From Zootoca vivipara (lineage: Eukaryota): a stretch of DNA of 64,000 nucleotides. The stretch lies in assembly GCF_963506605.1 (NCBI RefSeq), contig NC_083276.1, forward strand, positions 28,458,001 through 28,522,000, written 5' to 3'. The position numbers were made by a program, and so were the translations under genes. Position 1 is the stretch's first letter. Every line of letters starts with the position of its first letter. Under the pieces are notes generated by a model. The model was not told the origin of the DNA. It did no database searches and saw only the letters and a program-made list of their open reading frames with translations. Shown piece after piece: positions 1 to 60,551 of the stretch.

Positions 1-484
1 TATATCTGCCTTCTATCTGCATTTGTTCTCTTGATTCAAAATAATCTGCTTCTTGTGGCTCTTAACTAAATAATCAAAATTTGAGGCTGCGACAAAGGAA
101 GAATACCCCAATTGTATAATACCATGTGCCCCAGAACACGAGGTAATTCTATAATCAAAGCCAAACTATTCTATTATTAGAATGTGCACCTACTTAGAGT
201 GATTGGATTTCCTCTTTGTGTGCCGGTGCCTGAAGAAATAGCTCAGAGTGTTGTTTTTTAAGTCCAAAAATATTCAGAGATTATCCAAAACTGCCAAAGA
301 GGAATGCTTTTATCTTCTTGATAAACAAATAACCAATCTCAAATATCCTACATAAGCTCACAGCTTGCTCACGCATTACCCACAAAACACTAAAGAGCAA
401 TTGATTCAATCAACAGAAGCAAATGGTGAAAGATTGTCCTGAAAAAGAAAAAGATAAATGATTATCTACCACTTCATGATGCAA

Positions 485-919
485 GTAGCGATGTATGGAA
501 GTGAGAGCTGGACCATAAAGAAGGCTGATCGCCGAAGAATTGATGCTTTTGAATTATGGTGCTGGAGGAGACTCTTGAGAGTCCCATGGACTGCAAGAAG
601 ATCAAACCTATCCATTCTTAAGGAAATCAGCCCTGAGTGCTCCCTGGAAGGACAGATCGTGAAGCTGAGGCTCCAATACTTTGGCCACCTCATGAGAAGA
701 GAAGAATCCTTGGAAAAGACCCTGATGTTGGGAAAGATTGAGGGCACTAGGAGAAGGGGACGACAGAGGACAAGATGGTTGGACAGTGTTCTCGAAGCTA
801 CGAACATGAGTTTGACCAAACTGCGGGAGGCAGTGGAAGACAGGAGTGCCTGGCGTGCTCTGGTCCATGGGGTCACGAAGAGTCGGACACAACTAAACGA
901 CTAAACAACAACAACAACA
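485..919 (+). mobile_element. BovB (RTE clade) LINE 3' fragment
   Basis: MYGSESWTIKKADRRRIDAFELWCWRRLL...VHGVTKSRT; (CAA)n tail; possible TSD ATGCAA. Confidence 0.93.
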
Positions 920-18300: not shown

Positions 18301-21300
18301 CTTCATTCTGGAGGCCTCTACATGCATAGTGTTCCTCATACAAAAATAATGCAGCTCATTTCTATGCATATTTATGTGGAAGTAAGTTCTCCTTCATTGA
18401 GTGGTGTTCACTTCCAAGTAGGTGTGCATAGAATTGTAGTTTAAGTGGCTTCTTGTTAATGGCATGTAACCTTTAGATGAAAACTCGGGAAAGTTGTTGG
18501 GCCAGAAAAAAAACTAAGTATTTCGTGAACAAGTGTAAAATGTTAGGAGATCCTTCAACTTCTGAGTACTTAGTCCACCATCCACTGTGTTCTTCATAGC
18601 TGCAAGTTCAGCTTCCACTATGTTGCTGTTAACTCACATAAGAGATGGCTGCATCTAATTTTGAATTTCAAATGTATCTGTGCAGAGGACGGAGAAGCTA
18701 GAGAACGTGATGAAATCAGACATGACAGACGAAAAGAGAGACAGCATGACCGGAATCTTTCCAGAGCAGCCCCTGACAAAAGGTAAAGTTGTTCATCTAA
18801 TAATAACTGGGCAGTATACTACTTGATCAAGGTAAATTGATTCTAACCCAACAAATTAGCATTCATTTGGTTGTTCTTTTGTACTACGTTACTGTTGTTA
18901 TTCCATAAATTTTATATACCACTTCATTGGAGAAAACCTCAAAGCAATTTACAAGATTCGGAAATGTACATACCTGTAGTGCACTGATTTCTGGTGTGCT
19001 ATGGCACACTATTATGTTAAGAAGAGTAGTTTGTGTTGATTTTTGTGCTTCTATGTATTAAGTGCTTGTGTGTTCTTCTGCATAGCATTAGTTGAGGCTC
19101 TGTATAGCACTAGTTCCTTAGTTTCTCTCTATCAGCCCCAAAGGAGGGACCAAGGATGTATTATGATGGGATCTGCATCTGATGGGAACAAGATTCTGGT
19201 AGGTAGCCGTGTTGGTCTGATGCAGTTGAAATATTTTTTTAAAAATAAAAATTGTCCAGTAGCACCTTAGAGACAAGAACAAACCTAGTTGGTCTCTAAG
19301 GTGCTACTGGACAATTTTTTTATATATTTTTGATGGGAACAAGTTGACTTTGAGGATTAGCATGGAGAACATTAAACCGTTAGACAATCTATGGCCTTTT
19401 AAAATGTGGGGAGGGGTTATGGTTTTGTTTATTATTAAGATATTTATTGTTGTTTTTATACTGTAAACCACCCAGTAATCCTTGGAGGAAGAGAGGTATA
19501 TAAATTTAATAAATAATAATACCACCATGATCTTGCTTTTGATGGTCAGACAGGAGAGTGATACTGTAGAATGCAATATTTACCCTTAGGCAATAATGAT
19601 GCCTGTATAAAGGCTTGAACGTGGCAGGTCCTCCTGTGCCCATCATGTAGTTTACTTTTAGGCTGCACACTTTGTGCCAGCCGGACTAGCTGTCTATTGT
19701 ATTTTGAGAACCATATTTCTTTGCAGGCTGGATTGATTTTTAAATCACCCAGAAAAAACATAAATGGAATAAATTTGCATCTGAAGATTTAAATTGTTTC
19801 AAATCATTTCCCTTGCTTTAATTTATGCACTTCCTGAGCAAGCATATATGTGAGCTAGCTGCTAGAATAACTAACACACAATTGTGTTAAGTAGCAATTA
19901 ATAAGAGCCTTATACAATATATTCCACAACTTCTATGCAGCCCAGTTCTTTTGCGTAGCAGAATTATACCTGTTTTGGCCCTTTCTGTATTACCTGCAAA
20001 AACACTAAGCAAGATAACTTCCTGGAAGTTGAATGCCAGAATCCAAAGACGCTCAGAACTTGTTCCTAGCGACTTAAGAGGACTTTAGGTTTGTTTCTCC
20101 TGAAAGAACACTCCCCTTGCTGTTGCCCAGGCCTGTATGGCAAGCTATTTTTTGAAGTTGAGAGTTTCAAAAACAGGTTGTCATGGTGTGAAGTCAGCTT
20201 TATGAAGATGGGAAAATGCAAAGGAACCACTGGGTAGTTCAAATGTCATTCATGACTAAGTTATTCCTGTGTTCAAGCAAATCAGCACTGCTTCCTCAAA
20301 GTATGTATACCCCGCCCCCCAATAACTGCAAAACTCTCACTCCGACTTCCAACATCTTTATTCTGAATAGGCAGACTCCTCACATGGAAGTTTTAATGGT
20401 TGATATTTTTGCAACATAACCAGTATGCAATGTTGTTAACTCAGGTCGAAGTTGCAAAGGAATGAGAACAGAGATATTAGTGAAGTCATTGCCTTGGGTG
20501 TTCCTAACCCTCGGACATCCAGTGAGATCCAGTATGACCAAAGGCTCTTCAACCAGAGTAAGGTAAGTAATGCCATCCATTGCTCTGGAAAGTTATCACG
20601 ACGTTTGTTCAGAGACAATTGCCATGTATATGGCCAGATGTACAGCATTAAAAAGATAGGTACGACATAAAATAAAAATACCCTAAGTCAGGCATCCCCA
20701 AACTGCAGCCCTCCAGATGTTTTGGCCTAGTAACTCCCATGATCCCTAGCTAACAGGACACGTGGTCAGGGATGATGGGAATTGTAGTCCAAAACATCTG
20801 GAGGGTCGAAGGTTGGGGATGCCTGCCCTAAGCCATGTCAGCCAATTGACTGAACAAGCCATATTTTATCTTCTCATTTTCCAAATAGCTCACTGTGTAG
20901 TAGATCTGACAAGAGTTATTTGAGCTGTTCGTAAAATTTGTTCATAATTTCCAGCAATTCTAGTTTAAAGTACTCAGATGACAACAACTAGGAACCTGTA
21001 ACTAGTGTGTGTTGCAGGTTATACATTTGTTGTGGAAAATATAAGGCTGGTGGGGAGTGGGTAGGAAATAAATTGGACTCTGAAGACACATGTCCTCAAT
21101 ATTATTTTTGTAATGAAGTGGAAGCTACCAAGCACTCTACTGTTGCGTCCCAGACCTAGAGAGACCACAAGAAGGCCTATTATGCAAGCACCACATCCCA
21201 GAATGGGGTAGCTCTATCCTAGAACACGTTGAGTGAAGGAAAGCAAACTCTGCACTTCCTCCGGATGATACAATTAAACAGCTTCATTTCCTCTACAGCA

Positions 21301-27769: not shown

Positions 27770-27901
27770 ATGGCGGCGGGCGCTGTCTCCGCGCGGGAGG
27801 GTGGCGAGGACGCCTTCCGCCGGCTCTTTCGCTTCTACCGGCGGTGGGAGGGCTCGGACTCTTGCGGGGCCATTGATTTCTCGAAGCCAGCGGCGCGGCA
27901 G
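27770..27901 (+). CDS. ALKBH1: ALKBH1 exon 1
   Basis: [25 protein letters not shown]...[10 protein letters not shown]|gtaaac. Confidence 0.95.
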
Positions 27902-30900
27902 GTAAACCGGGCGGTAGTACCCTACCACACCGCCTCCGCCAACGCACGCTCTTGTCTCCATGGTGACAGCTGCCCCTTCCGGGTTATTGCATGTGCCGGG
28001 GGGAACCTTCTCTCCTCCATCCTCGGTACAGTTTTTGCCTCTGTATTTGCAGCTTAGCAGGAATGCCGAATGGATGGATGGAGGTGGGAAGGCTCCTCTT
28101 GTGGCAGAACTGAGGTTATTTTTTTGGGGGGGGGTTAGGCCAGCCACCCACAACAGGTGCACTCAGGTGTGGAATTCCTCAGGTAGGGAGGGTGTCGATT
28201 TTTAATTTTATTTTTTTTAAGAAACTAGTACAGCATATCGCTGCATGCAAGCAGCCACAAGCCTTCAAAAATATGACTCACACACGTGCAATGTGAAGCA
28301 ATACAGGATTCTGCTTTGTTTTGTATAAGTGGACTCACATATACAGTACTAGTGTATTTCAGCCCATTCAGTAACGGGCGCTAGAACATCCCGGGGTTCG
28401 GAGAAGCGCTTGGTTATCTTTAGGATATCTTTTTTTTTTTTTTGCTGGGCAAGCAAAGAGACGTTGATATTCATGGCATTTTCAAAAGATTAGCATCTTG
28501 CAAATGCTACGGTTTATTGATCTGTCACCAGCATTCTAATCTTTTCCACTGAACTCAATAGTTACAGTCAGAAGTATGTCCCATTGAGTTCAGTGAGGCT
28601 TACTCCCAGGTAAATGGGGTTAGACTTTAAGCCTGTTAATTTCATAAAGCTCCTTGAGAAGCAGCCTGAAGATGTGTAACAAACGTTCTACCACTATGGC
28701 ACCACATAATAAATGAAGTCATATCCATGTTTGAACATTTTTCTACTTGTTAATCACCTGGGCCAAAGCTATATGTTACATACACTACGATGTCAAGATT
28801 CTTTTTGATGACTAAAAAAATTCCTTCAGTAGCACCTTAAAGACCAACTAAGTTTATATTTTGGTATGAGCTTTCGTGTGCATGCACACTTCTTCAGATA
28901 CACGATGGACTTCCATTTCATGCGGCTCAATGTGGTGCCTTCCATAGTTCTAGTTACAGGTAGGTAGCCGTGTTGGTCTGAGTCGAAGCAAAATAAAAAA
29001 ATTCCTTCAGTAGCACCTTAAAGACCAACTAAGTTTATATTTTGGTATGAGCTTTCGTGTGCATGCACACTTCTTACTGGTGTATCTGAAGAAGTGTGCA
29101 TGCACACGAAAGCTCATACCAAAATATAAACTTAGTTGGTCTTTAAGGTGCTACTGAAGGAATTTTTTTATTTTGCTTCGACTCAGACCAACACGGCTAC
29201 CTACCTGTAACTTTTTGATGACTGTTGCTGCAATTAGGTAGAAAACTAGTGAGGTGGGGAGGGCATTCTGGTTTTTCTCTGAATATCTCTCCCTTTAGCT
29301 ACTTCTGCTTTGGGTTCTTAAGTCTAAATCTTTTAAAGACTATTTAATTGTTTAAATTTATGAATTGTCTTTTGTATGAGCCTCAAGGCAATTTTAATAT
29401 GCATCTTATCTGATCTTAGGTTCTTGCCTCTGAAAACTAAAGTTACAATCACCTACTTGGTATTTAAGGGGCTGCTTTGGGGGTTTTTAACAATCAAGTG
29501 GCATATACATTTTATGAAATAAATAAATAAACAATAGGGTAATCTTTTTACTGGTCACAGTGCCTTAGCCATTGTTTTGAAAAATAATTGGTATACACAT
29601 GACAACGGAGAAGTATGGTAGTTAAAAAAAGATAACCCGTTGATAATTAAGGGCAGCTAGTTGTAAGAGTCAGAAGGCTGGATGAATATGCAAATCTCTG
29701 TGCCACTAAAAGACTCAGCCAAATTTAGTGGTGCCCAGATTAGCATTACCCTGCAAATAGAGTGCACATCCAGAAACATTTGTGCATCCATATCAGCTGG
29801 TTTATGAATGGAAGTTTGCTTCTTCACAGGGATTTTCCTCATTGGATCTGGGCAATGGAGTCAAAGTTTGATAAAAGTGTTTAAGGGGAATGCGATATAA
29901 ATTGTATAAAATTGCATAAAAAGAGGAATCTGAAATGATTAACTCTTTTTTTAAATGCTAAATTTATACAGTACTTATTGAAAACAACATGAAACTTATT
30001 AAAAACTCTTTAGACCAGGGGTAGTCAACCTTTTTATATCTAAAGGTAAAGTTTCTTAAGTCCAGTCGCGAATGACTCTGGGGTTACGGCGCTCATCTCG
30101 CTTTACTGGCCAAGGGAGCCAGCATTTGTCCGCAGACAGTTTTTCCAGGTCACGTGGCCAGCATGACTGAGCTGCTTCTGGTGAAACCAGAGCAGTGCAC
30201 GGAAGCGCCATTTACTTTCCTGCCGGAGTGGTACTTATTTATCTATTTGCATTTTGGGCATGCTTTCAAACTGCTAGGTTGGCAGGAGCTCACCTTGTCA
30301 CGGGGATTTGAACTGCCGACCTTCTGATCGGCAAACCCAAGAGGCTCAGTGGGTTTTAGACCACAGCGCCACCTGTGTCCCAACTAATGCATCTTTCTTG
30401 ATGGTAAAATTTCCTTACCGCCCACCAGTGCTCGATGAAAGGAGGATTCAGCTTGTGCCATAGCACCCCCTACCGCCCACCTAGAATCCTGAAACGCCCA
30501 CTAGTGGCCTGAGGAACCAGGTTGACAACCCCTGATATAGACAAAAATTTATCTCTGGAACTCACTGCCTGCCCCCCATCATCCTCTTGGTCTCCTTAGA
30601 GCAGACTCAGTTGCCAGAAGCCTAGATGTTGTGATCGTTGTTCTCTGGTAATGTCTCCTGTTGTTGAATTTACTTTTGCAAATATTTGGAGGTGACCCTA
30701 ATAGATTGTATAAGAATGCATAGACAATTGTCCTAATTTTGGAATATTGCTGTTGAACATTTTTAATGTAGATTTCTTATCCCTTTGGTTGCTCTTTAAA
30801 GCTGGAAGGAGAGACCTGTATCATGGCCCACTCGCTTGTTTGGTACATCCACAGTGCCTCTCATTATCATCATCCTTGTGTATGGCAAATGTACGAATTA

Positions 30901-36900: not shown

Positions 36901-39283
36901 CCCATTTTGCATGGATGTTACACTTGAAACTCCAGTAGGGGAAGCTGCCTAATCTGCCCTCCACCTCAGCTTTGGAAAGGAGATAGTGGGTATTGACCTA
37001 AAACTCACTTTATTTTAGGTATTGACCTAAAACTCACTTTAAGTCACGACTGGATGTGTTCATAGGATGACTTTGTTCCTCTGGAATTCTTTTCTGTGTA
37101 TTTGTTGTTGTTCTTTTGCTCCTTCACCAGAAATATTCAGCCAACCACTACACACCCTTTCCATCTGACTTGGCTTTCCTCTCGGAGCAAGTGGCTAAAG
37201 CTTGTGGTTTTCCACGTTTCCAAGCAGAAGCAGGAATCCTCAACTACTATCACTTTGATTCATCTCTGGGAATTCACGTGGATGAGTCCGAATTGGACTA
37301 TTCTCAGCCGCTTCTATCATTCTGGTAGGCTACCCAAACATTTCATCTTCTAGCTAACACATCTTGATTAAAGTGTACAAATGACAGGCTTCGTGTGGCA
37401 AACATAAACTTCTTCCCTGAAGTGTAGGGATGTGGCAGATCAAGCTCACGGGCAACTGACTACTGATCCAGAATACCGTAGTAGGATTGCTGAAGTCAAT
37501 GGGAGCCATTGTTTATTTCATTTATAAACATTGATTCCATACCCCCCCCCAATAATAGCCCTGTAGGCTAGCCTGTCAATTGACCTTTGTCCATCCTAAC
37601 ATTCTGCATTGTTCCTGAGTTTCTTCTCTGTACTCTGAGGTCAGACTGTTAGTGAAGGCTACAACCCAAAATAGAAGACCTATTCCGTGGAGGAAGCAGG
37701 GAAGGAGTACTTCTTAGTGCTTCTTTTTCTTTACTGTTTACATTGGGAAAAGTGCCAATATATAATTTCTATTATTGGGGTTAGAATGGAGAAGAAATTT
37801 TAGCAGAAACATCACCAATTGGGAGATGGTTGAGAAACACCCCACCAAGCCTTCATGGCTGCATTTTGTAAAAGAAAATAGTAACACCTGGGACAAGCTA
37901 CATGCCATTGAGTGCCGTGTGTGGTTTGGCCCTGAGAATAACTTTGACCATTATATAAGAACAGGGCCAGCTCACCCATGAGACAAGGTGAGGCGACCGC
38001 CTTGGGTGGCAGGATCCACAGCGGCAGCAGATCCCAATGTAGATATTCAGTTCTTCCCCACACCTTGTTTCTGGTGTAGATCTTCATTCACCTTTCTTCC
38101 CTGGTAGGGAGCAGGACACCATTTTGCAGTTTGCCTCAGGTGCTAATATGTTTTGGGCTGTCCCTGTACAGGAACATTGGAAGTTGCCCCATCCCTATGA
38201 AACACCCTCCCTTGAGATGTCAAGGAGATAAAGAACTGTGTGTAACTTTTAGAAGACATCTGAAGGCAGCCCTGTATCGGAAAGCTTTTAATGTTTGATG
38301 TTTTATTATGTTTCAATATATGCTGTAAGCCGCCCAGAGTGGCTGGGGAAACAAAGCCAGATGGGCAGGGTATAATTAATGACATTGTTATTATTATTTT
38401 GTTTGTTTATTATAATTATTATTATTTAAGTCAGGTCCATCTAGGTTCAGAATTGTACGCTGACTGGCAGTGACTGTCCAGGATTTCAGACAGGGGTGTC
38501 TCCCAGACCAACCTGGAAATGCCAGGGATCGAACTTGGGACCTTCTGAATGTAAAGCAGATGTTCTACCACTGAGCTACAGCTCTTCCCCTAATAAATGT
38601 GTTTAAAGTACCATAAGAGGAAGGGTGTGGGGAGCTGTTTGCTGGCTTTGGAGTTGAATGAGATAACGCTTTGGAAAGTGCATATATACTATGTAAATTA
38701 TAACATAAAAAGAACCAATACAGCACAACACTGGTGGTCTTTATGTTTATGCCGAGTTGCAGCGGAACTTCCGCCTAGCCTATTGAGAAGAGAATAGCTG
38801 GTAAAATCTACCATAGCTACAGTTTTACTAACTGCCTTCTCTCTTTTTCCTCTGTCTAGTTTTGGACAGTCATCCATATTTTTGTTAGGGGGGCTGAAAC
38901 GAGATGAAGCCCCTGTGGCCATGTTCATGCACAGCGGGGACATGATGATCATGTCTGGCTTCAGCCGCCTGCTGTACCACGCAGTCCCCAGGATTCTGCC
39001 CAACCTGGAGGGGAAGCCTTTGCCTTCTTGCCTGGAGCTGCCTGTCCATGCTGACCTTCCTGAAGACTCTGTTATGGAGCCCTGCTCTCAGGAGGACTGG
39101 CAAGTCTGTGCCAAGTATCTGCAAGCATCCCGTGTCAACATGACTGTCAGGCAAGTGCTTGCTGAAGGTCAGAGCTTCCCAGCTGAAGCCAGGACAGGGA
39201 GAGACCTGGATGCTTCTTCCATAGGCTCTTATCATGAGGAGCACAGTGAAATAAAAAAGCACAAGTCTGATCCGGGCAGCTGA
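27770..39283 (+). CDS. ALKBH1: Nucleic acid dioxygenase ALKBH1 (AlkB homolog 1), 6 exons, 370 aa
   Basis: Exons 27770-27901, 32638-32746, 33014-33176, 36262-36352, 37131-37324, 38860-39283; 1113 nt with consistent phases. [24 protein letters not shown], Fe-binding GIHVD and LLYHAVPR, 2OG-binding RVNMTVRQV. Confidence 0.97.
28349..28425 (-). mobile_element. Probable minimal non-autonomous Helitron (77 bp)
   Basis: Minus strand a|TCCTAAAG...GCCCGTT(ACTG)AATGGGC-TGAAATACA-CTAG|t: TC start, subterminal hairpin, CTAG end, A/T site, no TSD. Confidence 0.65.
28863..28901 (-). ncRNA. Minimal type I hammerhead ribozyme motif (PLE-type)
   Basis: GUAU-CUGAAGA-A-GUGUG(CAUG)CACAC-GAAA-GCUC-AUAC on the minus strand. 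Confidence 0.8.
29082..29119 (+). ncRNA. Minimal type I hammerhead ribozyme motif (PLE-type), sense strand of ALKBH1 intron 1
   Basis: CTGAAGA 29086-29092, stem II GTGTG/CACAC, GAAA 29108-29111, CUC triplet 29113-29115, stem I GTAT/ATAC. Confidence 0.8.
30041..30381 (-). mobile_element. Sauria SINE nested in a hAT MITE (30016-30534)
   Basis: taaaggtaaag tail, gactctggggtt, gggatttgaactgccgacc B-box region; host TIRs caggggtagtcaacc / ggttgacaacccctg. Confidence 0.85.
32638..32746 (+). CDS. ALKBH1: ALKBH1 exon 2
   Basis: [37 protein letters not shown]. Confidence 0.95.
33014..33176 (+). CDS. ALKBH1: ALKBH1 exon 3
   Basis: [37 protein letters not shown]...QLR. Confidence 0.95.
36262..36352 (+). 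CDS. ALKBH1: ALKBH1 exon 4
   Basis: [30 protein letters not shown]. Confidence 0.95.
37131..37324 (+). CDS. ALKBH1: ALKBH1 exon 5
   Basis: [14 protein letters not shown]...[32 protein letters not shown]. Confidence 0.95.
38250..38425 (+). mobile_element. L2 3' tail fragment
   Basis: agaagacatctgaaggcagccctg...gccgcccagagtggctggggaaac. Confidence 0.75.
38430..38590 (-). mobile_element. tRNA-derived SINE
   Basis: gggatcgaacttgggacc...ctaccactgagctacagc (A/B boxes on minus); related copies near 4056-4270 (+) and 53625-53790 (-). Confidence 0.7.
38860..39283 (+). CDS. ALKBH1: ALKBH1 exon 6 (stop)
   Basis: [27 protein letters not shown]...LLYHAVPR...RVNMTVRQV...*. Confidence 0.95.
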
Positions 39284-39552: not shown

Positions 39553-39700
39553 TTTAGAAGACATCTGAAGGCAGCCCTGTTTAGGGAAGTTTTTAATATC
39601 TGATGTTTTATTGTATTTTTAATTTTTTGTTGGACGCCGCCCAGAGTGGCTGGGGAAACCCAGCCAAATGGGCGGGGTATAAATAATATTATTATTACTG
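39553..39700 (+). mobile_element. L2 3' tail fragment
   Basis: Same family; its (tta)n tail was the target of the Penelope-like insertion. Confidence 0.75.
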
Positions 39701-39902
39701 GTTACAGGTAGGTAGCCGTGTTGGTCTGGGTCGAAGTAAAATAAAAAATTTCCTTCAGTAGCACCCTAAAGACCAACTAAGTTTTTATTTTGGTATGAGC
39801 TTTCGTGTGCTTTCGGTATCTGAAGAAGTGTGCATGCACACGAAAGCTCATACCAAAATAAAAACTTAGTTGGTCTTTAAGGTGCTACTGAAGGAAAAAA
39901 AT
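39701..39902. mobile_element. Miniature Penelope-like inverted pLTR insertion
   Basis: Same family as 28814-29210; 14-bp TSD TATTATTATTACTG (39687-39700 and 39903-39916). Confidence 0.85.
39815..39854 (+). ncRNA. Minimal type I hammerhead ribozyme motif downstream of the ALKBH1 stop
   Basis: GGUAU-CUGAAGA-A-GUGUG(CAUG)CACAC-GAAA-GCUC-AUACC; 5-bp stem I; predicted cleavage after 39849. Confidence 0.82.
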
Positions 39903-41928
39903 TATTATTATTACTGTTTTAACTTTGGTTCAGACTGAAATGGCCATTCAAAGGCACTTTGCTAACAGCAGCACCTTAATGTACATCCCTTCATACTGCT
40001 AGCCTGAAGTCCTGCTGTGTTGTCTAGAGAGACCTGCTGTGTGCCTTGCAATGTGCTTATTACCTATTGACTGATACCAGGGGTTCATTTTGAGGGTGGG
40101 ATGGGGCTTTTATTTAAAACAACCTCCCTTTCTCGGAGGAAAATAATTAGGGACTGTGTAGTGATTTTTCTATTCAATATGTCCTTTTCTTCCCCTTGTC
40201 TCTGAATACTAAAACTGCCCTGTTCCATCAGCGTTAGGCCGTTTGGCTGCCTGCATAATGCAATCTTTGCAGTCTGCCTCCTTCAGGAGCAAGCAGAAGA
40301 GAATGACTTTACAAACAGGAACAATGAAGTTGTAGATGAAGCGCCCAGAAAGAAAATTAATCAGCGACTATCTCTATTGCCCAAAAGGTAAACATATTGA
40401 AACAAATAAGGACAACACAGTCTTCAGTGCCCATCTGTTTTAGGATTCCGACTTCCCTATCTGGTTTTTAATGCAATTTTAATTGCCAGAGTGCAGCGCT
40501 CTGTCCCAGGGGTGTTTTGTCGCACTTTTCCCATGAATAAGCTTACTCTGTTTTAAATTAAAGATCCCTATCTGTCTTGGAGAGCTGTTTCTCTCTCTCT
40601 TTCCTCCTCCCCTCCTCCTCTTTGGTTAGTTATTTTGTTCATGCTGCAGTATTGTTCATGCTGCCTTGAGCAACTCTCACCTTTTCCTTCAGGCTATGTC
40701 TAGCTCTGCTGTTCCTGATATCCCCCAGCAGAACATGGAGTATCTGCTCACCTCTACACGGCTAAACTCTGAGGAAGTTGGGCGTTTCTTTGCAATGCTC
40801 GACCATGGTGTGGGTTTGGTATAGTCCTCCATATCTCTCTCTGGGCTATGCATTCCTGTGATGCATCAGGATTTTCAAAAGAAAACAACTGGCACCTGTT
40901 TTCAGAAGTTAGGCTTGCATTTCATTAATGGTTCAAAGAGAAAAGTCTTTTCTGTGCAGGCATTCAATATGGAATGATATTAATAAATTAAGTTTTCCTG
41001 AGATAATATATGAGGGTACACAAGGGAAGAACTGAATTCTCTTTCACATTGAGCCTCAGAAACAGCCCACATTTGCCAGCAAATGCAGCTGGGAGCTGCA
41101 TCCAATCATGACATGCTTGTTGTGTTCACTCTTGGCATTTCCAGGGGAATACTTAGGCTTTCTTCTGAGTAAGCATGCATAGGGTTACACTGTTAAAATG
41201 TTTGGGGGTGTATACTTATAAAATTATAATGTGTACAGTAGCTCACAGATCTCCCATATAAAATATGTACCTGAGATTTCTGCTTCTGCTTGTGGAAAGA
41301 AGGGGGCGTGTTTAGGTTTACCTTAAGAGGTCAGCTAATCCCGGGACATTTTAAATTGTGCTCAGTGTGGCTGCCTATCATTTTATTTAACAAACAGTAT
41401 ATAGCATTTAACTGTAAGTAAACCTCTAAGTGGTTTACAAAAATATTTTTCCCCACCCCCAATTATGGTAATCTCTAGCCCAGAAAAAAATGTTGTAGGT
41501 CAATATAATTATCCCATTGTCTTGGGGGTGGGGGACTTTCCCTTGGATACTTTAATAAGAATATCCTAATAGATAGCAGTTAAGATGTCCCAGCCATTTG
41601 TTCTAAACTCTGTTACTACCGTACTCCTTGATTAATACATGCAGTGGAACCTCGGGTTGTAGACATAATCCATGATGGAGGCACATCCGCAACCTGAAGC
41701 GTTCTCATCCTGAAGCACGGCGTCTGCGCAGGCGCCGGTGCGATCTGGCACTTCTTTTTTTTTTTTTTTCCAAATAAGTTTTTATTCATTTTTTTCATAA
41801 AGATATTAACAATCATACATATTACAAATAATTCATTCTATGTGACTTCCTTCCAACCCATAAGTGGTAACTTCTGTCAAGCTTGCTTCGTATTTTCTAT
41901 TTACAAACAACTCATCACACTGTAGGGG

Positions 41929-55880: not shown

Positions 55881-56125
55881 AAGGTAAAGGTAAAGGGACC
55901 CCTGACCATTAGGTCGTCGTGACTGACTCTGGGGTTGCGGCACTCATCTTGCGTTATTGGCCGAGGGAGCCAGCATACAGCTTCCAGGTCATGTGGCCAG
56001 CATGACAAAGCCGCTTCTGGCAAACCAGAGCAGCACACGGAAACGCTGTTTACCTTCCCGCTGTAGCGGTACCTATTTATCTACTTGCACTTTGATGTGC
56101 TTTCGAACTGCTAGGTTGGCAGGAG
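55881..56125 (-). mobile_element. Sauria SINE, 5'-truncated
   Basis: aaggtaaaggtaaagggacccctgacc tail; 12-bp TSD CTGTTACTATTA (55869-55880 and 56126-56137). Confidence 0.88.
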
Positions 56126-56186
56126 CTGTTACTATTATATACAAGCTATTTACATTCCTTCTTTATCTCTGGGCCAGTAAGACACA

Positions 56187-58231
56187 ATCTCAATCAAATC
56201 CCTTATGAACAAACAGTGGAAGTGAGGAACAGGTTTAAGGATTTAGATTTGGTGGACAGAGTGCCTGAAGAACTATGGATGGAGGCTCATAACATTATAC
56301 AGGAGGCAGCAACGAAAACCATCCCAATGAAAAGGAAATGCAAGAAAGCAAAGTGGCTGTCCAATGAGCCCTTACAAATAGCAGGGGAGAGAAGGCAGGC
56401 AAAATGCGAGGGAGATAGTGAAAGATACAGGAAATTGAATGCAGACTTCCTAAAAATAGCAAGGAGAGACAAGAGGGTCTTCTTAAATGAGCAATGCAAA
56501 GAAAGAGGGGAAAACAACAGAATGGGAAAAACCAGAGATCTGTTCAAGAAAATTGGAGATATGAAAGGAACATTTCGTACAAAGATTACCATTACAAAGG
56601 ACAAAAGTGGAAGGGACCTAACAGAAGCAGAAAACATCAAGAAGAGGTGGCAAGAATACACAGAGGAATTATACCAGAAAGATATGGAGGTCTTGTATAC
56701 CCCAGGTAGTGTGATTGCTGACCTTGAGCCAGACATCCTGGAGAGTGAAGTCAAATGGGCCTTAGAAAGCACTGCTAATAACAAGGCCAGTGGAAGTGAT
56801 GATATTCCAGCTGAACTATTTAAAATTTTAAAAGATGACGCTGTTAACGGTGCCACACTCAATATGCCAGCAAGTTTGCAAAACTCAGCAGTGGCCAGAG
56901 GATTGGAGATCAGTCTACATCCCAATGAAGGGCAGTGCCAAAGAATGCTCCAACTACCACACAATTGCGCTAATTTCACATGCTAGCAAGGTTATGCTTA
57001 AAATTCTACAAGGCAGGCTTAAGCAGTATGTGGACCGAGAACTCTCAGAAGTGCAAGCTGAATTTTGAAGAGGCAAAGGAACCAGAGACCAAATTGCAAA
57101 CCTGCGCTGGATTATGGAGAAAGCTAGAGCGTTCCAGAAAAGCATCTACTTCTGCTTCATTGACTACACAAAAGCATTTGACTGTGTCGACCACAGCAAA
57201 CTATGGCAAGTTCTTAAAGAAATGGGAGTGCCTGATCACCTCATCTGTCTCCTGAGAAATCTCTATGTGGGACAAGAAGCTACAGTTAGAACTGGATATG
57301 GAATAACTGATTGGTTCAAAATTGGGAAAGGAGTATGAAAATGCTGTATATTGTCTCCCTGCTTATTTAACTTATATGCAGAATTCATCATGCAAAAGGT
57401 TGGACTGGATGAATCCCAAGCCGGAATTAAGATTGCTGGAAGAAATATCAACAACCTCAGATATGCTGATGAGACAACCTTGATGGCAGAAAGTGAGGAG
57501 GAACTAAAGAACCTTTTAATGAGGGTGAAAGAGGAGAGCACAAAATATGGTCTGAAGCTGAACATAAAAAAAAAACTAAGATCATGGCCACTGGTCCCAT
57601 CACCTCCTGGCAAATAGAAGGGGAAGAAATGGAGGCAGTGAGAGATTTTACTTTCTTGGGTTCCATGATCACTGCAGATGGTGACAGCAGTCCTGAAATT
57701 AAAAGACGCCTGCTTCTTGGGAGAAAAGCAATGACAAACCTAGACAGCATCTTAAAAAGCAGAGACATCACCTTGCCGACAAAGGTCCGTATAGTTAAAG
57801 CTACGGTTTTCCCAGTAGTGATGAATGGAAGTGAGAACTGGACCATAAAGAAGGCTGATCGCCAAAGAATTGATGCTTTTGAAATATGGTGCTGGAGGAG
57901 ACTCTTGAGAGTCCCATGGACTGCAAGATCAAACCTATCCATTCTTAAGGAAATCAGCCCTGAGTGCTCACTGGAAGGACAGAGCCTGAAGCTGAGGCTC
58001 CAATACTTTGGCCACCTCATGAGAAGAGAAGACTCCCTGGAAAAGACCCTGATGTTGGGAAAGATGGAGGGCACAAGGAGAAGGGGACGACAGAGGACGA
58101 GATGGTTGGACAGCGTTCTTGAAGCCACCAATTTGAATCTGACCAAACTGCAGGAGGCACTGGAAGACAGGAGTGCCTGGCGTGCTATGGTCCATGGGGT
58201 CACGAAGAGTCGGACACGACTAAACAACAAC
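56187..58231 (+). mobile_element. BovB LINE, 5'-truncated and frameshifted
   Basis: VEVRNRFKDLDLVDRVPEEL, FIDYTKAFDCVDH, NLRYADET, IDAFEIWCWRRLL; (CAA)n tail. Confidence 0.95.
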
Positions 58232-59684
58232 AGCTGTTAATCATTAATGAGGAGAAAAGAAAACTGGCTATATGTGTCCCTATCCCTTCTGTTGTCATCC
58301 AGTAACACACACCTGCTTCTGGCATCTAATCTTTAAATCTTTGCTTCTTGACCTTTGAAGTGATCGCCATATATTTGCCAGAGGCATCACTGCTATGTGC
58401 TACTCTGACCAGACTGGCTTCTCAAGCAATAAGAATCATACTAATTTCTGCTCTTGGCATGCGTCCCAAATCAGATAAAGGGAGGGGATAGGAAATACCT
58501 TTACTCTGCTGCAGACTCTATAGTGATATTCTCTCTCTCTCAACATGATATAAGGCCAGAGCACACCCTATTAGCTAATATAGAATGGAAACAATATTGG
58601 AGGATGGTATATATCACGATCAGGCAGGTTTCCTTCCTGGGAGACAAATGAAGGATAATATAAGAAATATCATAGATGTGATAGAATACTTGGAAGAAAG
58701 AAATGAAAAGCAGGCAGCATTGATATTTATAGATGGTGAAAAAGCGTTTGATAATGTTTCATGGGAATTTATGAAAAAAGTCATTGAAGAAATTAATTTT
58801 GGAGAAAATTTTAGGAAAGATGCAAGCAATATATTCTGATCAAAAAGCCAAATTAATTGTAAATCAGGTGGTAACAGATCATTGTAAGATACAGAAAGGA
58901 ACAAGACAGGGATGTCCATTATAACCTTTCTTATTTATTTTGATTCTAGTCCTGATGAGAAATATCAAGGCAGATGAAACCATTAGAGGAATTATGGTGG
59001 AGAAAAAGACATATAAATTAAAGGTATATGCAGATGACCTTGTAATTACAATCGAGGACCCTAAGAACTCTCTCTCGAAAGTTTTAGAAAAAAATAGAGG
59101 AATTTGGGCAAGTGGCAGGTTTTAAGTTGAATAAAAATAAGACAGCTGTTAGTGAAAAAATCTATCAAAAATGATAAAAAAGAACTACAGCAGAATATAG
59201 CAATAGAGATCCATAAAAAAGTTAAATATATAGGAATTTGGTTGACAACCAAAAATATTAACATTATTGAAGACAATTATGAAAAAAATTGGAATGAAAT
59301 AAAAAGGAATTTAGAAATATGGGGAAGAATGAACTTATCATTGTTAGGAAGAATTGCAGTGATTAAGATGAGCATATTGCCAAAAATGTTATTTTGATTT
59401 CAGTCAGTTCCGGTTATAAGTACTGTAATGCAGCATGCTTCAAGAAATGGCAAAGGGCTATTACAAAATTTATCTGGAAAGGGAAGAAACGAAGAATAAA
59501 ATATAAATTACTTATGGACATTAAAGACAGAGGTTTCTCCCTTCCAGATTTTAAATTATATTACGAAGCTGCTTGCATTGCTTGGATCCAGGACTGGAAT
59601 AAATTAGAAAATGTTGATTTGTTAGATCTTGAAGGACATGAGAACAGATTTGGATGGCATGCGTATTTGTGGTATGATAAAGGG

Positions 59685-59734
59685 CCCCAGAGTCAGTCAC
59701 GACTGAACCTAATGGTCAGGGGTCCCTTTACCTT
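59685..59734 (+). mobile_element. 50-bp Sauria SINE tail inside the L1 relic
   Basis: ccccagagtcagtcacgact...ccctttacctt; TSD TAAAGGG. Confidence 0.8.
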
Positions 59735-60551
59735 TAAAGGGAAAGTGCATAAAGGATTTTACAATCATATAATCAGGAGATCACTTCTGAAAGTCTGGGA
59801 AAGATAAAAAGATTTATTAGATTAGTTGTCACCAACAAAAGCAACATCAATTAAAAAAATAAATAGGAAAGAAGAATGGCTTACATATTGAGATCTCTTA
59901 ATATAAATAGAAGGGAAATTAAAATTGAAAGATTTTGAAGAGATTCGAGAATATGTCAATGACTGGTTGCAGTATTTCCAAGTAAATGAGATATTTAAAG
60001 ATAAAAAGAAAGGATTCAGTTATACTCTGTCTAGATTTCAAAGAGAAATTGTATATGACTATACCAAAATATTGAAGACAATATACATCCTTTTCACACA
60101 CAAAGACAACAGGTTGCACGTTTACATATAAATCAAATAAGGTCTTCCTGGCATTACAGCCAAGAGGCAATTAAACTGACACAGAGACATCCATCCTAAA
60201 AGGAGCCCCAGTACATTCCTAGGATGCTGGAGTTTGGCTCATCCCAGAATGCTCCGTGTTTCATGAACCAAAGTTTTTAAACATACACAGAAATTTCCCC
60301 CAATTTCACTACAATGGGAAATAAAAGATGAAGAGGTCAAATGTGTTATGATTAAATGGGCACAAGATTTAGGACATAATATACAAATGAAAGATTGGGG
60401 GGAACTATGGAAAGTGGATTTAAAATTTACTGATTGTACAACTCTGAGAGAGAATTACAGTATATGAAAATGATTTATCGATGGTATATGACACCTGTTA
60501 AACTTGCAAAAATGTATAGAACAAGTTCCAATAAGTGCTGGAAGTGTAAAG

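What the first reader, a model, noticed from the sequence alone, without database searches (positions are those of the whole stretch)
28801..29223. Retrozyme-like miniature Penelope cassette with hammerhead ribozymes in ALKBH1 intron 1
Seen: a 397-bp insert between 13-bp TSDs. On the minus strand it has two tandem copies of a ~130-nt repeat (period 181 nt; ttccttcag at 28821 and 29002), plus a third, inverted copy. The repeat has a hammerhead layout: stem I GUAU/AUAC, CUGAAGA, stem II GUGUG(CAUG)CACAC, GAAA, palindromic AGCU in place of stem III, and a CUC cleavage triplet. Cores are intact at 28863-28901 (-) and 29082-29119 (+); the middle core is broken at the inversion. The ~50-nt spacer reads ATG(28945)[14 protein letters not shown], which from recall resembles the N-terminus of reptile Penelope ORFs. 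Known: Penelope-like elements carry minimal type I hammerheads in their pLTRs that cleave as dimers, and metazoan non-LTR retrozymes are short tandem hammerhead units. Inference: a PLE that lost almost its whole ORF and may move in trans as a ~181-nt self-cleaving, possibly circular, RNA unit.
Basis: partly seen in the sequence, partly recalled or inferred. Interest (0 to 1): 0.82.

Follow-up and report, generated by a model that had tools for sequence, protein, structure and literature searches.

The report
Truncated Penelope retroelement insertion with hammerheads
This is a young, ORF-less insertion of a Penelope-like retrotransposon tail carrying minimal hammerhead ribozymes in intron 1 of a lizard ALKBH1 gene; its odd tandem-plus-inverted layout is the standard footprint of how these elements insert, so it is a good example of a known kind, not a new one.

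Summary
A 397-bp insert (28814-29210) sits between exact 13-bp duplications in ALKBH1 intron 1. It holds 1.45 tandem copies of a 181-nt unit on the minus strand plus an inverted copy, all 100% identical. Complete minimal type I hammerheads lie at 28864-28901(-) and 29082-29119(+).

The layout is the published Penelope-like element (PLE) signature: extreme 5' truncation, partial tandem, adjacent inverted copy, and a ~40-nt tail at one end only. Its two outer ends lie 54-55 and 95-97 nt past the ribozyme cut. The two internal reverse-transcription starts measured for Anolis Poseidon lie 56 and 90 nt past it. Two more insertions in the window share these ends and 13-bp duplications.

The tandem junction falls exactly on the distal start site. 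The 181-nt unit is therefore a head-to-tail join of one truncated copy, not an ORF deletion. The 39-codon ORF has no relatives.

This locus cannot release a 181-nt RNA: one same-strand ribozyme is truncated, and a ~125-bp perfect hairpin locks the rest. First-stage notes flag many similar insertions elsewhere in this genome.

The parts
28801..28813 (.). Left 13-bp target-site duplication, CTTTTTGATGACT
   Evidence: Exact copy of 29211-29223; the flanking bases differ.
28814..28903 (-). Arm A: the 3'-most sense copy, running from 2 nt upstream of the hammerhead to the proximal RT start site (+70/71 from the ATG in loop II). It has no tail.
   Evidence: 100% identical to 28994-29075 and complementary to 29080-29170; alignment A1.
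28864..28901 (-). Complete minimal type I hammerhead. The predicted cut is after C at 28868. It is the only ribozyme outside the long hairpin.
   Evidence: Descriptor hit. The monomer MFE forms stems I and II, -7.8 kcal/mol. It lies outside the hairpin in the minus-strand fold.
28829..28945 (-). 39-codon ORF (MEGTT...RCY; stop at 28826-28828) running from the spacer through the hammerhead. Judged non-coding.
   Evidence: Translation. No relatives or families. Every frame of the unit has stops.
28904..28951 (-). 48-nt unique spacer between the distal RT start site of the upstream copy and the hammerhead of the downstream copy. Most likely the last ~50 nt of the element's 3'UTR/pLTR upstream of the ribozyme.
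   Evidence: Single occurrence in the window. Best local match elsewhere is no better than shuffled controls. Position follows from alignment A1.
28952..29075 (-). Arm B: the upstream sense copy. Its hammerhead lacks GUAUCUG (dead core). It runs through the 41-nt tail to the distal RT start site (+112).
29076..29079 (.). 4-nt filler (ACTG) at the head-to-head junction of the two cDNAs
   Evidence: Not part of either arm.
29080..29210 (+). Arm C: the inverted copy, with a complete hammerhead (29082-29119, cut after 29115) and the tail. It ends at the distal RT start site, overlapping the TSD by 2 nt.
   Evidence: Fully paired with arm B in RNA folds of either strand.
29211..29223 (.). Right 13-bp target-site duplication
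39687..39915 (+). Second insertion of the same family. TSD TATTATTATTACT (39687-39699 and 39903-39915). Tail arm 39700-39810(-), 5-nt filler, then hammerhead arm 39816-39902(+). It is about 4.5% diverged from insertion 1.
19180..19343 (-). Third insertion, from a diverged subfamily. TSD CTTGTTCCCATCA on the minus strand (19180-19192 and 19331-19343), 138-bp insert at 19193-19330. It has the same head-to-head layout and the same two kinds of end, but is truncated before the hammerhead.

Best explanation
The insert is the product of one retrotransposition event by a Penelope-like element reverse transcriptase/GIY-YIG nuclease acting on short pLTR-region RNA.

Proposed mechanism:
- The nuclease made nicks staggered by 13 bp, and both 3' ends primed cDNA synthesis.
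- One strand started at the proximal internal start site, 54-55 nt past the hammerhead cut.
- The other strand started at the distal site, 95-97 nt past the cut. This leaves the 41-nt 'tail' at one end only.
- The two cDNAs met head-to-head and were joined through a 4-nt filler, giving the inverted arm.
- On the longer cDNA the enzyme ran 48-51 nt upstream of the hammerhead and then re-initiated at the distal start site of another RNA, or another unit. This created the 181-nt partial tandem.
- The spacer is therefore most likely 3'UTR/pLTR sequence, not ORF.

I favour the junction having been made in this event (about 0.5) over inheritance from a pre-existing 181-nt tandem template (about 0.35).

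At this locus the element is dead on arrival. It has no ORF and one truncated ribozyme. Its main local property is a ~125-bp perfect hairpin in any transcript, including ALKBH1 pre-mRNA.

Shown: the anatomy, the end positions, the ribozyme motif, the hairpin. Inferred: the enzymology, by analogy to Anolis Poseidon_Ac.
For: - Exact 13-bp TSDs at all three family insertions in the window.
- In all three, one arm ends at ...GGCTACCTACC(TGTAAC/AGAAT) and the other ends in the T-run after CTACTGAAGGAA (alignment A1).
- These ends lie 54-55 and 95-97 nt from the hammerhead cut. PAc starts lie about 56 and 90 nt from its cut (cut after +29, ~34-nt tail spanning +85 to +119). PAc also cleaves and extends both DNA strands in vitro (PMC11167929).
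- Craig et al. 2021 (PMC8557442) describe PLE insertions as highly 5'-truncated partial tandems. They often have an adjacent inverted 5'-truncated copy and a 30-40-bp tail, often at one end only.
- The tandem junction GTAAC|TAGAAC coincides, within about 2 nt, with the ends of arm C and of the insertion-2 tail arm.
- All internal copies are 100% identical, which fits one event. I estimate an age below 4-10 My (95% bound).
- The dead-on-arrival reading rests on the descriptor scan and RNA folds and on the absence of a TRF array.
Against: - No full-length relative of this family was available. That the spacer is 3'UTR is therefore inferred, not shown.
- The enzymology comes from a different PLE family (Poseidon_Ac), whose sequence is unrelated to this one.
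- Template jumping to the internal start site has not been demonstrated for PLEs.
- Three perfectly identical copies, in a family that shows 4.5% divergence between insertions, fit a single multimeric template somewhat better than several independent RNA molecules.
Confidence: 0.5

Rival explanations
1. The template was a multimeric or circular RNA from an ORF-less 181-nt tandem family (a squamate non-LTR retrozyme). That family propagates in trans on PLE machinery, and this locus is one of its insertions.
For: - The unit length (181 nt) and GC content (41%) fit published non-LTR retrozymes. These are reported as 170-400 nt in PMC7229834, with a reptile mean of 176 bp and presence in 4 of 5 reptiles in 10.64898/2026.07.22.740005.
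- The three copies are 100% identical, as expected from one multimeric RNA.
- Unchecked first-stage notes report tandem 138-nt and 140-150-nt hammerhead units elsewhere in this genome.
Against: - The spacer occurs once in 64 kb, although two other insertions of the family are present.
- The locus fails the operational retrozyme criterion of two consecutive complete hammerheads.
- By analogy with PAc, RNA recognition needs sequence out to about +172. A 181-nt unit replaces this after +112.
- No expression or copy-number data could be obtained.
Confidence: 0.35
2. A full-length PLE suffered an internal deletion that removed nearly the whole ORF, leaving its N-terminal codons ([14 protein letters not shown]) as the spacer.
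For: An ATG-initiated frame exists in the spacer. In PAc the ORF begins inside the hammerhead region, so coding sequence near the ribozyme is plausible in principle.
Against: - The frame stops after 39 codons, and every frame of the unit has stops.
- It has no relatives or families.
- It is unrelated to the PAc N-terminus.
- The spacer lies upstream of the hammerhead, where PAc has 3'UTR. The PAc ORF starts in stem II, downstream.
- The left breakpoint would have to coincide by chance with the RT start site.
Confidence: 0.05
3. The structure is an assembly fold-back artefact, or a local duplication-inversion unrelated to retrotransposition.
For: Perfect 124-nt inverted arms with a 13-nt loop resemble long-read fold-back chimeras.
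Against: - Exact TSDs bracket the element precisely.
- Two other insertions in the window have the same architecture, different TSDs and some arm divergence.
- The palindrome consists of element sequence only, not flanking DNA.
Confidence: 0.03

Closest known systems
Penelope-like element insertions (pLTR / partial tandem / inverted 5'-truncated copy / tail), as described by Craig et al. 2021 (PMC8557442) and dissected for Poseidon_Ac of Anolis carolinensis by Frangieh et al. 2024 (PMC11167929)
   Same: - Extreme 5' truncation, a partial tandem and an adjacent inverted copy.
- A ~40-nt tail at one end only, and a TSD.
- A hammerhead just upstream of the ends.
- Two insertion end points at nearly the same distances from the ribozyme cut as the two PAc RT start sites.
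   Different: - This is a different sequence family from Poseidon_Ac.
- No RT/GIY-YIG ORF is retained.
- The tandem period is 181 nt instead of about 2.7-3 kb.
- The TSD is exactly 13 bp in 3 of 3 insertions, whereas the literature describes variable TSD length.
Metazoan non-LTR retrozymes (Cervera & de la Pena 2020, PMC7229834; Li, Clavereau & Pollet 2026, bioRxiv 10.64898/2026.07.22.740005)
   Same: - A short AT-rich unit of the right size with a type I hammerhead.
- PLE-related sequence, and a TSD longer than 4 bp.
- Dimer-dependent ribozyme design.
   Different: - Only 1.45 units, with one complete and one truncated hammerhead on the same strand.
- It is accompanied by an inverted arm.
- No evidence of a multi-copy family, of expression or of circles.
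- The ribozyme is the minimal PLE type. The 2020 paper defined retrozymes by the canonical type I hammerhead with loop-loop contacts.
Minimal hammerheads of PLE pLTRs (Cervera & de la Pena 2014, PMC4209133)
   Same: - CUGANGA/GAAA core, short open helix I, and an unpaired nucleotide before helix II.
- Helix III replaced by a 4-nt palindrome, implying action as a dimer.
- 'Dual motifs 100-700 bp apart on opposite strands' are reported there too.
- Such motifs were noted there in turtles and snakes.
   Different: Helix II here is 5 bp with a CAUG loop and forms a 14-nt perfect palindrome. Cleavage was not tested here.
LINE-1 twin priming (Ostertag & Kazazian 2001; cited from my own knowledge)
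   Same: Both produce a head-to-head inverted 5' segment within one TSD pair, by priming from both nicked strands.
   Different: Here both outer ends are site-specific internal start sites on the RNA. In L1 they are a poly(A) end plus a microhomology-chosen internal site.

Membership tests
Minimal type I hammerhead of PLEs | Conserved catalytic core: CUGANGA ... GAAA ... cleavage triplet ending in H (not G) | tested here: met
   CUGAAGA, GAAA and C17 are present at 28864-28901(-), 29082-29119(+) and 39816-39853(+). The descriptor gave 3 hits against 0 in 200 shuffled windows.
Minimal type I hammerhead of PLEs | Short open helix I, helix II hairpin with an unpaired 5' nucleotide, helix III reduced to a short palindrome (dimer design) | tested here: met
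   GUAU/AUAC (4 bp); an unpaired A followed by GUGUG(CAUG)CACAC; AGCU. The features are as listed in PMC4209133.
Minimal type I hammerhead of PLEs | Self-cleavage (as dimer or protein-assisted) | not testable with these tools
   No assay was possible. In PAc, cleavage needed the protein, and no in vivo reads ended at the cut site.
Rfam hammerhead families | Match to a curated covariance model | tested here: not met
   No hammerhead family matched at gathering score in the window, or at E<=10 in 28700-29320. Only sub-threshold miRNA-like hits caused by the hairpin were returned.
Penelope-like element insertion | ORF with telomerase-like RT and GIY-YIG endonuclease | tested here: not met
   No ORF longer than 39 codons. 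There are stops in all frames and no Pfam family. This is consistent with a 5'-truncated or non-autonomous copy.
Penelope-like element insertion | Partial tandem (pLTR) plus an adjacent inverted 5'-truncated copy | tested here: met
   1.45 tandem units plus a 131-nt inverted arm. The feature is defined in PMC8557442.
Penelope-like element insertion | 30-40-bp tail present at one end, reflecting two internal RT start sites | tested here: met
   A 41-nt tail is present on one arm only in all three insertions. The distances from the ribozyme cut match PAc.
Penelope-like element insertion | Target-site duplication; AT-rich target | tested here: met
   Exact 13-bp TSDs in 3 of 3 insertions. The targets are T/A-rich (CTTTTTGATGACT, TATTATTATTACT). 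The ATT preference could not be judged from three sites.
Non-LTR retrozyme | Tandem array with at least two consecutive units, each with a complete hammerhead | tested here: not met
   One complete and one truncated motif lie on the minus strand. TRF finds no array.
Non-LTR retrozyme | Unit of ~150-450 nt, GC below 45-50% | tested here: met
   181 nt and 41% GC.
Non-LTR retrozyme | Multi-copy family sharing the whole unit; expressed as linear and circular monomer RNAs | not testable with these tools
The public contig scans were empty. The spacer is unique in the window.

The most novel reading that the evidence does not exclude
The 181-nt unit is a genuine squamate retrozyme family. This locus would then show, at nucleotide resolution, that animal retrozyme RNAs are integrated by the PLE machinery: the same two internal RT start sites, both-strand priming and a fixed 13-bp stagger. 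It would also show that tandem units arise by re-initiation at the distal start site. That would give a concrete birth-and-spread mechanism for animal retrozymes, distinct from rolling-circle copying of ribozyme-made circles.
Probability: 0.3. Interest if true: 0.55.

Novelty: new member of a known kind. Interest (0 to 1): 0.3.

Why it matters
As it stands this is a textbook PLE insertion footprint. It is useful mainly as a clean, very young example.

It has one modest point of wider interest. The tandem junction coincides with the distal reverse-transcription start site, and both outer ends of three independent insertions fall on the two start sites. This supports, from genomic anatomy alone, the in vitro finding that PLEs initiate internally at two sites and extend both strands. 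It also suggests that 'retrozyme-like' short tandem hammerhead units can be by-products of PLE insertion and need not be independent replicators. That bears on the current proposal that animal retrozymes are non-autonomous PLE derivatives.

Locally, the insert places a ~125-bp perfect dsRNA hairpin about 0.9 kb into ALKBH1 intron 1.

Tried and rejected
- Exact-pattern scans for the hammerhead core and for a conserved pLTR motif gave 0 hits in metagenome contigs and 0 in viral contigs. These collections hold little or no lizard DNA, so the result is uninformative.
- A full-text search for four sequence strings of the element found no paper.
- The word-based protein search with the 63-aa stop-to-stop frame found nothing. 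Pfam found nothing.
- The exhaustive phmmer search gave three hits at E=2.7e-5 to 6.2e-4. All are to internally repetitive proteins, at 33-42% identity over 26-39 residues, with scores inflated by repeated stretches. I rejected them as spurious.
- The left flank shares short words with the spacer (I9/I10). I rejected a suspected similarity because the alignment score was no better than shuffled controls.
- Snap-back self-priming cannot explain the inverted arm, because it cannot produce the spacer.
- Palindrome-mediated annealing of the two cDNAs through stem II predicts a loop-less perfect palindrome, which is not seen.
- I rejected two successive nested insertions, since there is no internal TSD and all copies are identical.
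- The search of earlier findings by sequence returned nothing.
- The supplements of the 2026 retrozyme preprint hold no reptile sequences.
Full report
**What is there**

Reading both strands and the repeat finder confirm the observation. An exact 13-bp direct repeat, CTTTTTGATGACT, lies at 28801-28813 and 29211-29223. It brackets a 397-bp insert and cannot be extended on either side.

On the minus strand the insert reads as follows:
- an antisense copy (29210 down to 29080);
- a 4-nt filler (29079-29076);
- 262 nt of sense sequence (29075 down to 28814), which is 1.45 copies of a 181-nt unit.

All repeated parts are 100% identical: 82 nt direct at spacing 181, and inverted arms of 124 nt and 91 nt.

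I wrote an explicit descriptor for the minimal hammerhead. It requires a 4-bp stem I, CUGANGA, an optional unpaired base, a perfect stem II, GAAA, a short A...U segment, a non-G residue, and the return strand of stem I. It hits exactly three places in the 64-kb window:
- 28864-28901(-)
- 29082-29119(+)
- 39816-39853(+)

It gave no hits in 200 shuffled windows. The middle copy begins at AAGAAG and so lacks stem I and the CUG of the core.

Rfam's hammerhead models do not match, even at E<=10. The only sub-threshold hits are to miRNA-like families and reflect the long hairpin. TRF reports no tandem array, because there are fewer than two units.

**Gene context**

The last coding exon at 38798-39280(+) matches human ALKBH1 structures at E=1.6e-55. 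Further ALKBH1-like exons lie at about 33.0-33.2, 36.3 and 37.1-37.3 kb. An exon-1-like ORF ([24 protein letters not shown]...) starts near 27770 in a CpG island.

The insert therefore lies about 0.9 kb into intron 1. The 1.45-unit part is antisense to the gene.

**Two more insertions reveal the rule**

The window holds two further insertions of the family.
- One is at 39700-39902, with TSD TATTATTATTACT.
- The other is at 19193-19330, with TSD CTTGTTCCCATCA on the minus strand. It belongs to a diverged subfamily and is truncated before the ribozyme.

Both TSDs are exactly 13 bp. Both insertions have the same head-to-head layout.

Aligning all seven arms in sense orientation (alignment A1) shows a consistent pattern. 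In every insertion one arm ends at ...GGCTACCTACC(TGTAAC or AGAAT). The other ends about 41 nt earlier, in the T-run after CTACTGAAGGAA.

Counted from the predicted ribozyme cut, these ends lie at 54-55 nt and 95-97 nt. There is 1-2 nt of ambiguity where the element and the TSD overlap.

**Match to published PLE biology**

Craig et al. 2021 (PMC8557442) describe PLE insertions as highly 5'-truncated. They are often partial tandems, often have an inverted 5'-truncated copy immediately adjacent, and carry a 30-40-bp tail that is often present at one end only.

Frangieh et al. 2024 (PMC11167929) studied purified Poseidon_Ac of Anolis carolinensis. They report that:
- the protein cleaves and extends both DNA strands;
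- reverse transcription starts internally at two adjacent sites whose spacing is the tail (roughly +85 to +119);
- the hammerhead straddles the pLTR-ORF junction, with its cut after +29.

The starts are therefore about 56 and 90 nt past the cut, close to the 54-55 and 95-97 nt found here.

The Poseidon_Ac consensus is a different sequence family. The agreement is one of geometry, not of homology.

If both nicked strands prime at these fixed sites, the product must have both outer ends at start sites. It must also have two 5'-truncated copies meeting head-to-head. All three insertions show exactly this. L1-type twin priming would not give site-specific outer ends.

**The 181-nt period and the spacer**

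The only unusual feature is that the partial tandem has a period of 181 nt, not about 3 kb.

The junction between the two sense copies reads GTAAC|TAGAAC. It therefore falls, within about 2 nt, on the same distal start site at which arm C and the insertion-2 tail arm end. That coincidence is expected if the unit is one 5'-truncated copy joined head-to-tail to the next at the RT start site. Such a copy would run from 48-51 nt upstream of the hammerhead to the distal start. The coincidence would be an accident if the unit arose by an internal deletion of the ORF.

By position, the 48-nt unique spacer (28904-28951) is then most likely the end of the element's 3'UTR/pLTR. In Poseidon_Ac the sequence upstream of the ribozyme is a 126-nt 3'UTR, and the ORF starts inside stem II.

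- It stops after 39 codons inside the repeat.
- Every frame of the unit has stops.
- The word search and Pfam found nothing.
- The exhaustive phmmer search gave only three weak hits to internally repetitive proteins. These are artefacts of summed repeats.
- The peptide does not resemble the Poseidon_Ac N-terminus.

A caveat applies. A match of only 14 residues could not have reached significance. I also had no full-length element of this family. So the N-terminus idea is unsupported, not formally excluded.

**What this copy can do**

RNA folding of either strand gives a perfect ~125-bp hairpin (-256 and -261 kcal/mol). It pairs arm B with arm C and so buries the plus-strand ribozyme and the truncated one.

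Only 28864-28901(-) stays free. It folds into stems I and II as a monomer (-7.8 kcal/mol). But the design, with AGCU in place of helix III, needs a partner.

PLE minimal hammerheads cleave poorly in vitro (PMC4209133). The Anolis one needed the PLE protein and left no in vivo reads at the cut site.

With one dead ribozyme on the same strand, this locus cannot release a 181-nt monomer. It is a product, not a source. It also fails the operational retrozyme criterion of two consecutive complete motifs.

Zero differences over about 370 comparable sites gives a 95% upper age of about 4-10 My at 0.8-2 x 10^-9 per site per year. The rates are my assumption.

**What remains open**

The template may have been RNA from an existing 181-nt tandem family, that is, a reptile non-LTR retrozyme. 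Li et al. 2026 report a mean unit of 176 bp in reptiles and argue that retrozymes are PLE derivatives. Alternatively the join may have been made during this event, by re-initiation at the distal start site. I could not decide between them.

Points favouring an existing template:
- the perfect identity of the three copies;
- first-stage notes, unchecked, of 138-nt and 140-150-nt tandem hammerhead units elsewhere in this genome.

Points favouring a de novo join:
- the spacer occurs once in the window, although two other family insertions are present;
- by analogy with PAc, RNA recognition needs sequence to about +172, which a 181-nt unit lacks.

I put these at about 0.35 and 0.5.

Public contig scans found nothing.

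Full-length elements, and repeated joins from one defined RNA 5' end, would share that junction too. The +112|spacer junction, the array length and the period distribution are the informative quantities.

**Verdict**

It over-reads the spacer and the autonomy of the unit.

The structure is the known PLE insertion footprint in a family that I did not find described by sequence. First-stage notes show that the scan has flagged many similar insertions in this same genome.

Noticed in passing
window 39687-39915: A second insertion of the same family lies about 420 nt downstream of the ALKBH1 stop codon, with an intact hammerhead in the gene's sense orientation (39816-39853, cut after 39849). The insert itself supplies two AATAAA hexamers on the plus strand, at 39740 and 39857. 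It might therefore contribute a polyadenylation signal or sit in the 3'UTR.
   Followed up: partly
window 19180-19343 (minus strand): A third insertion, of 138 bp, comes from a diverged subfamily and is truncated before the hammerhead. It still has the head-to-head layout, the same two kinds of end and a 13-bp TSD.
   Followed up: partly
window 28801-28813, 39687-39699, 19180-19192: All three insertions have TSDs of exactly 13 bp, although the PLE literature describes variable TSD length. Two of the three targets share ACT|GTT at the right boundary. This hints at a fixed 13-bp stagger for this family's nuclease, possibly a dimer.
   Followed up: partly
window 28952-29212: Any ALKBH1 pre-mRNA carries a perfect ~125-bp intramolecular hairpin with a 13-nt loop, about 0.9 kb after exon 1. 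This is a potential ADAR or Dicer substrate. It also explains the sub-threshold miRNA-family hits in Rfam.
   Followed up: partly
window 28876-28889 and copies: Stem II with its loop is a 14-nt perfect palindrome (GTGTGCATGCACAC). RNAcofold prefers an intermolecular 14-bp duplex between two ribozyme copies (-32.6 kcal/mol) over two hairpins. In two insertions the head-to-head junction lies within or a few nt from this palindrome.
   Followed up: partly
window 38514-38585 (-): A tRNA-like sequence (Rfam tRNA, 42.4 bits) lies inside an ALKBH1 intron. It is probably the head of a tRNA-derived SINE and not a tRNA gene.
   Followed up: no
window 458-901, 56096-58237, 58579-59804: Long reverse-transcriptase-like ORF fragments of other retroelements are present. 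By eye they look like BovB/RTE and L1 types. None is a PLE, so no candidate autonomous partner lies in this window.
   Followed up: no
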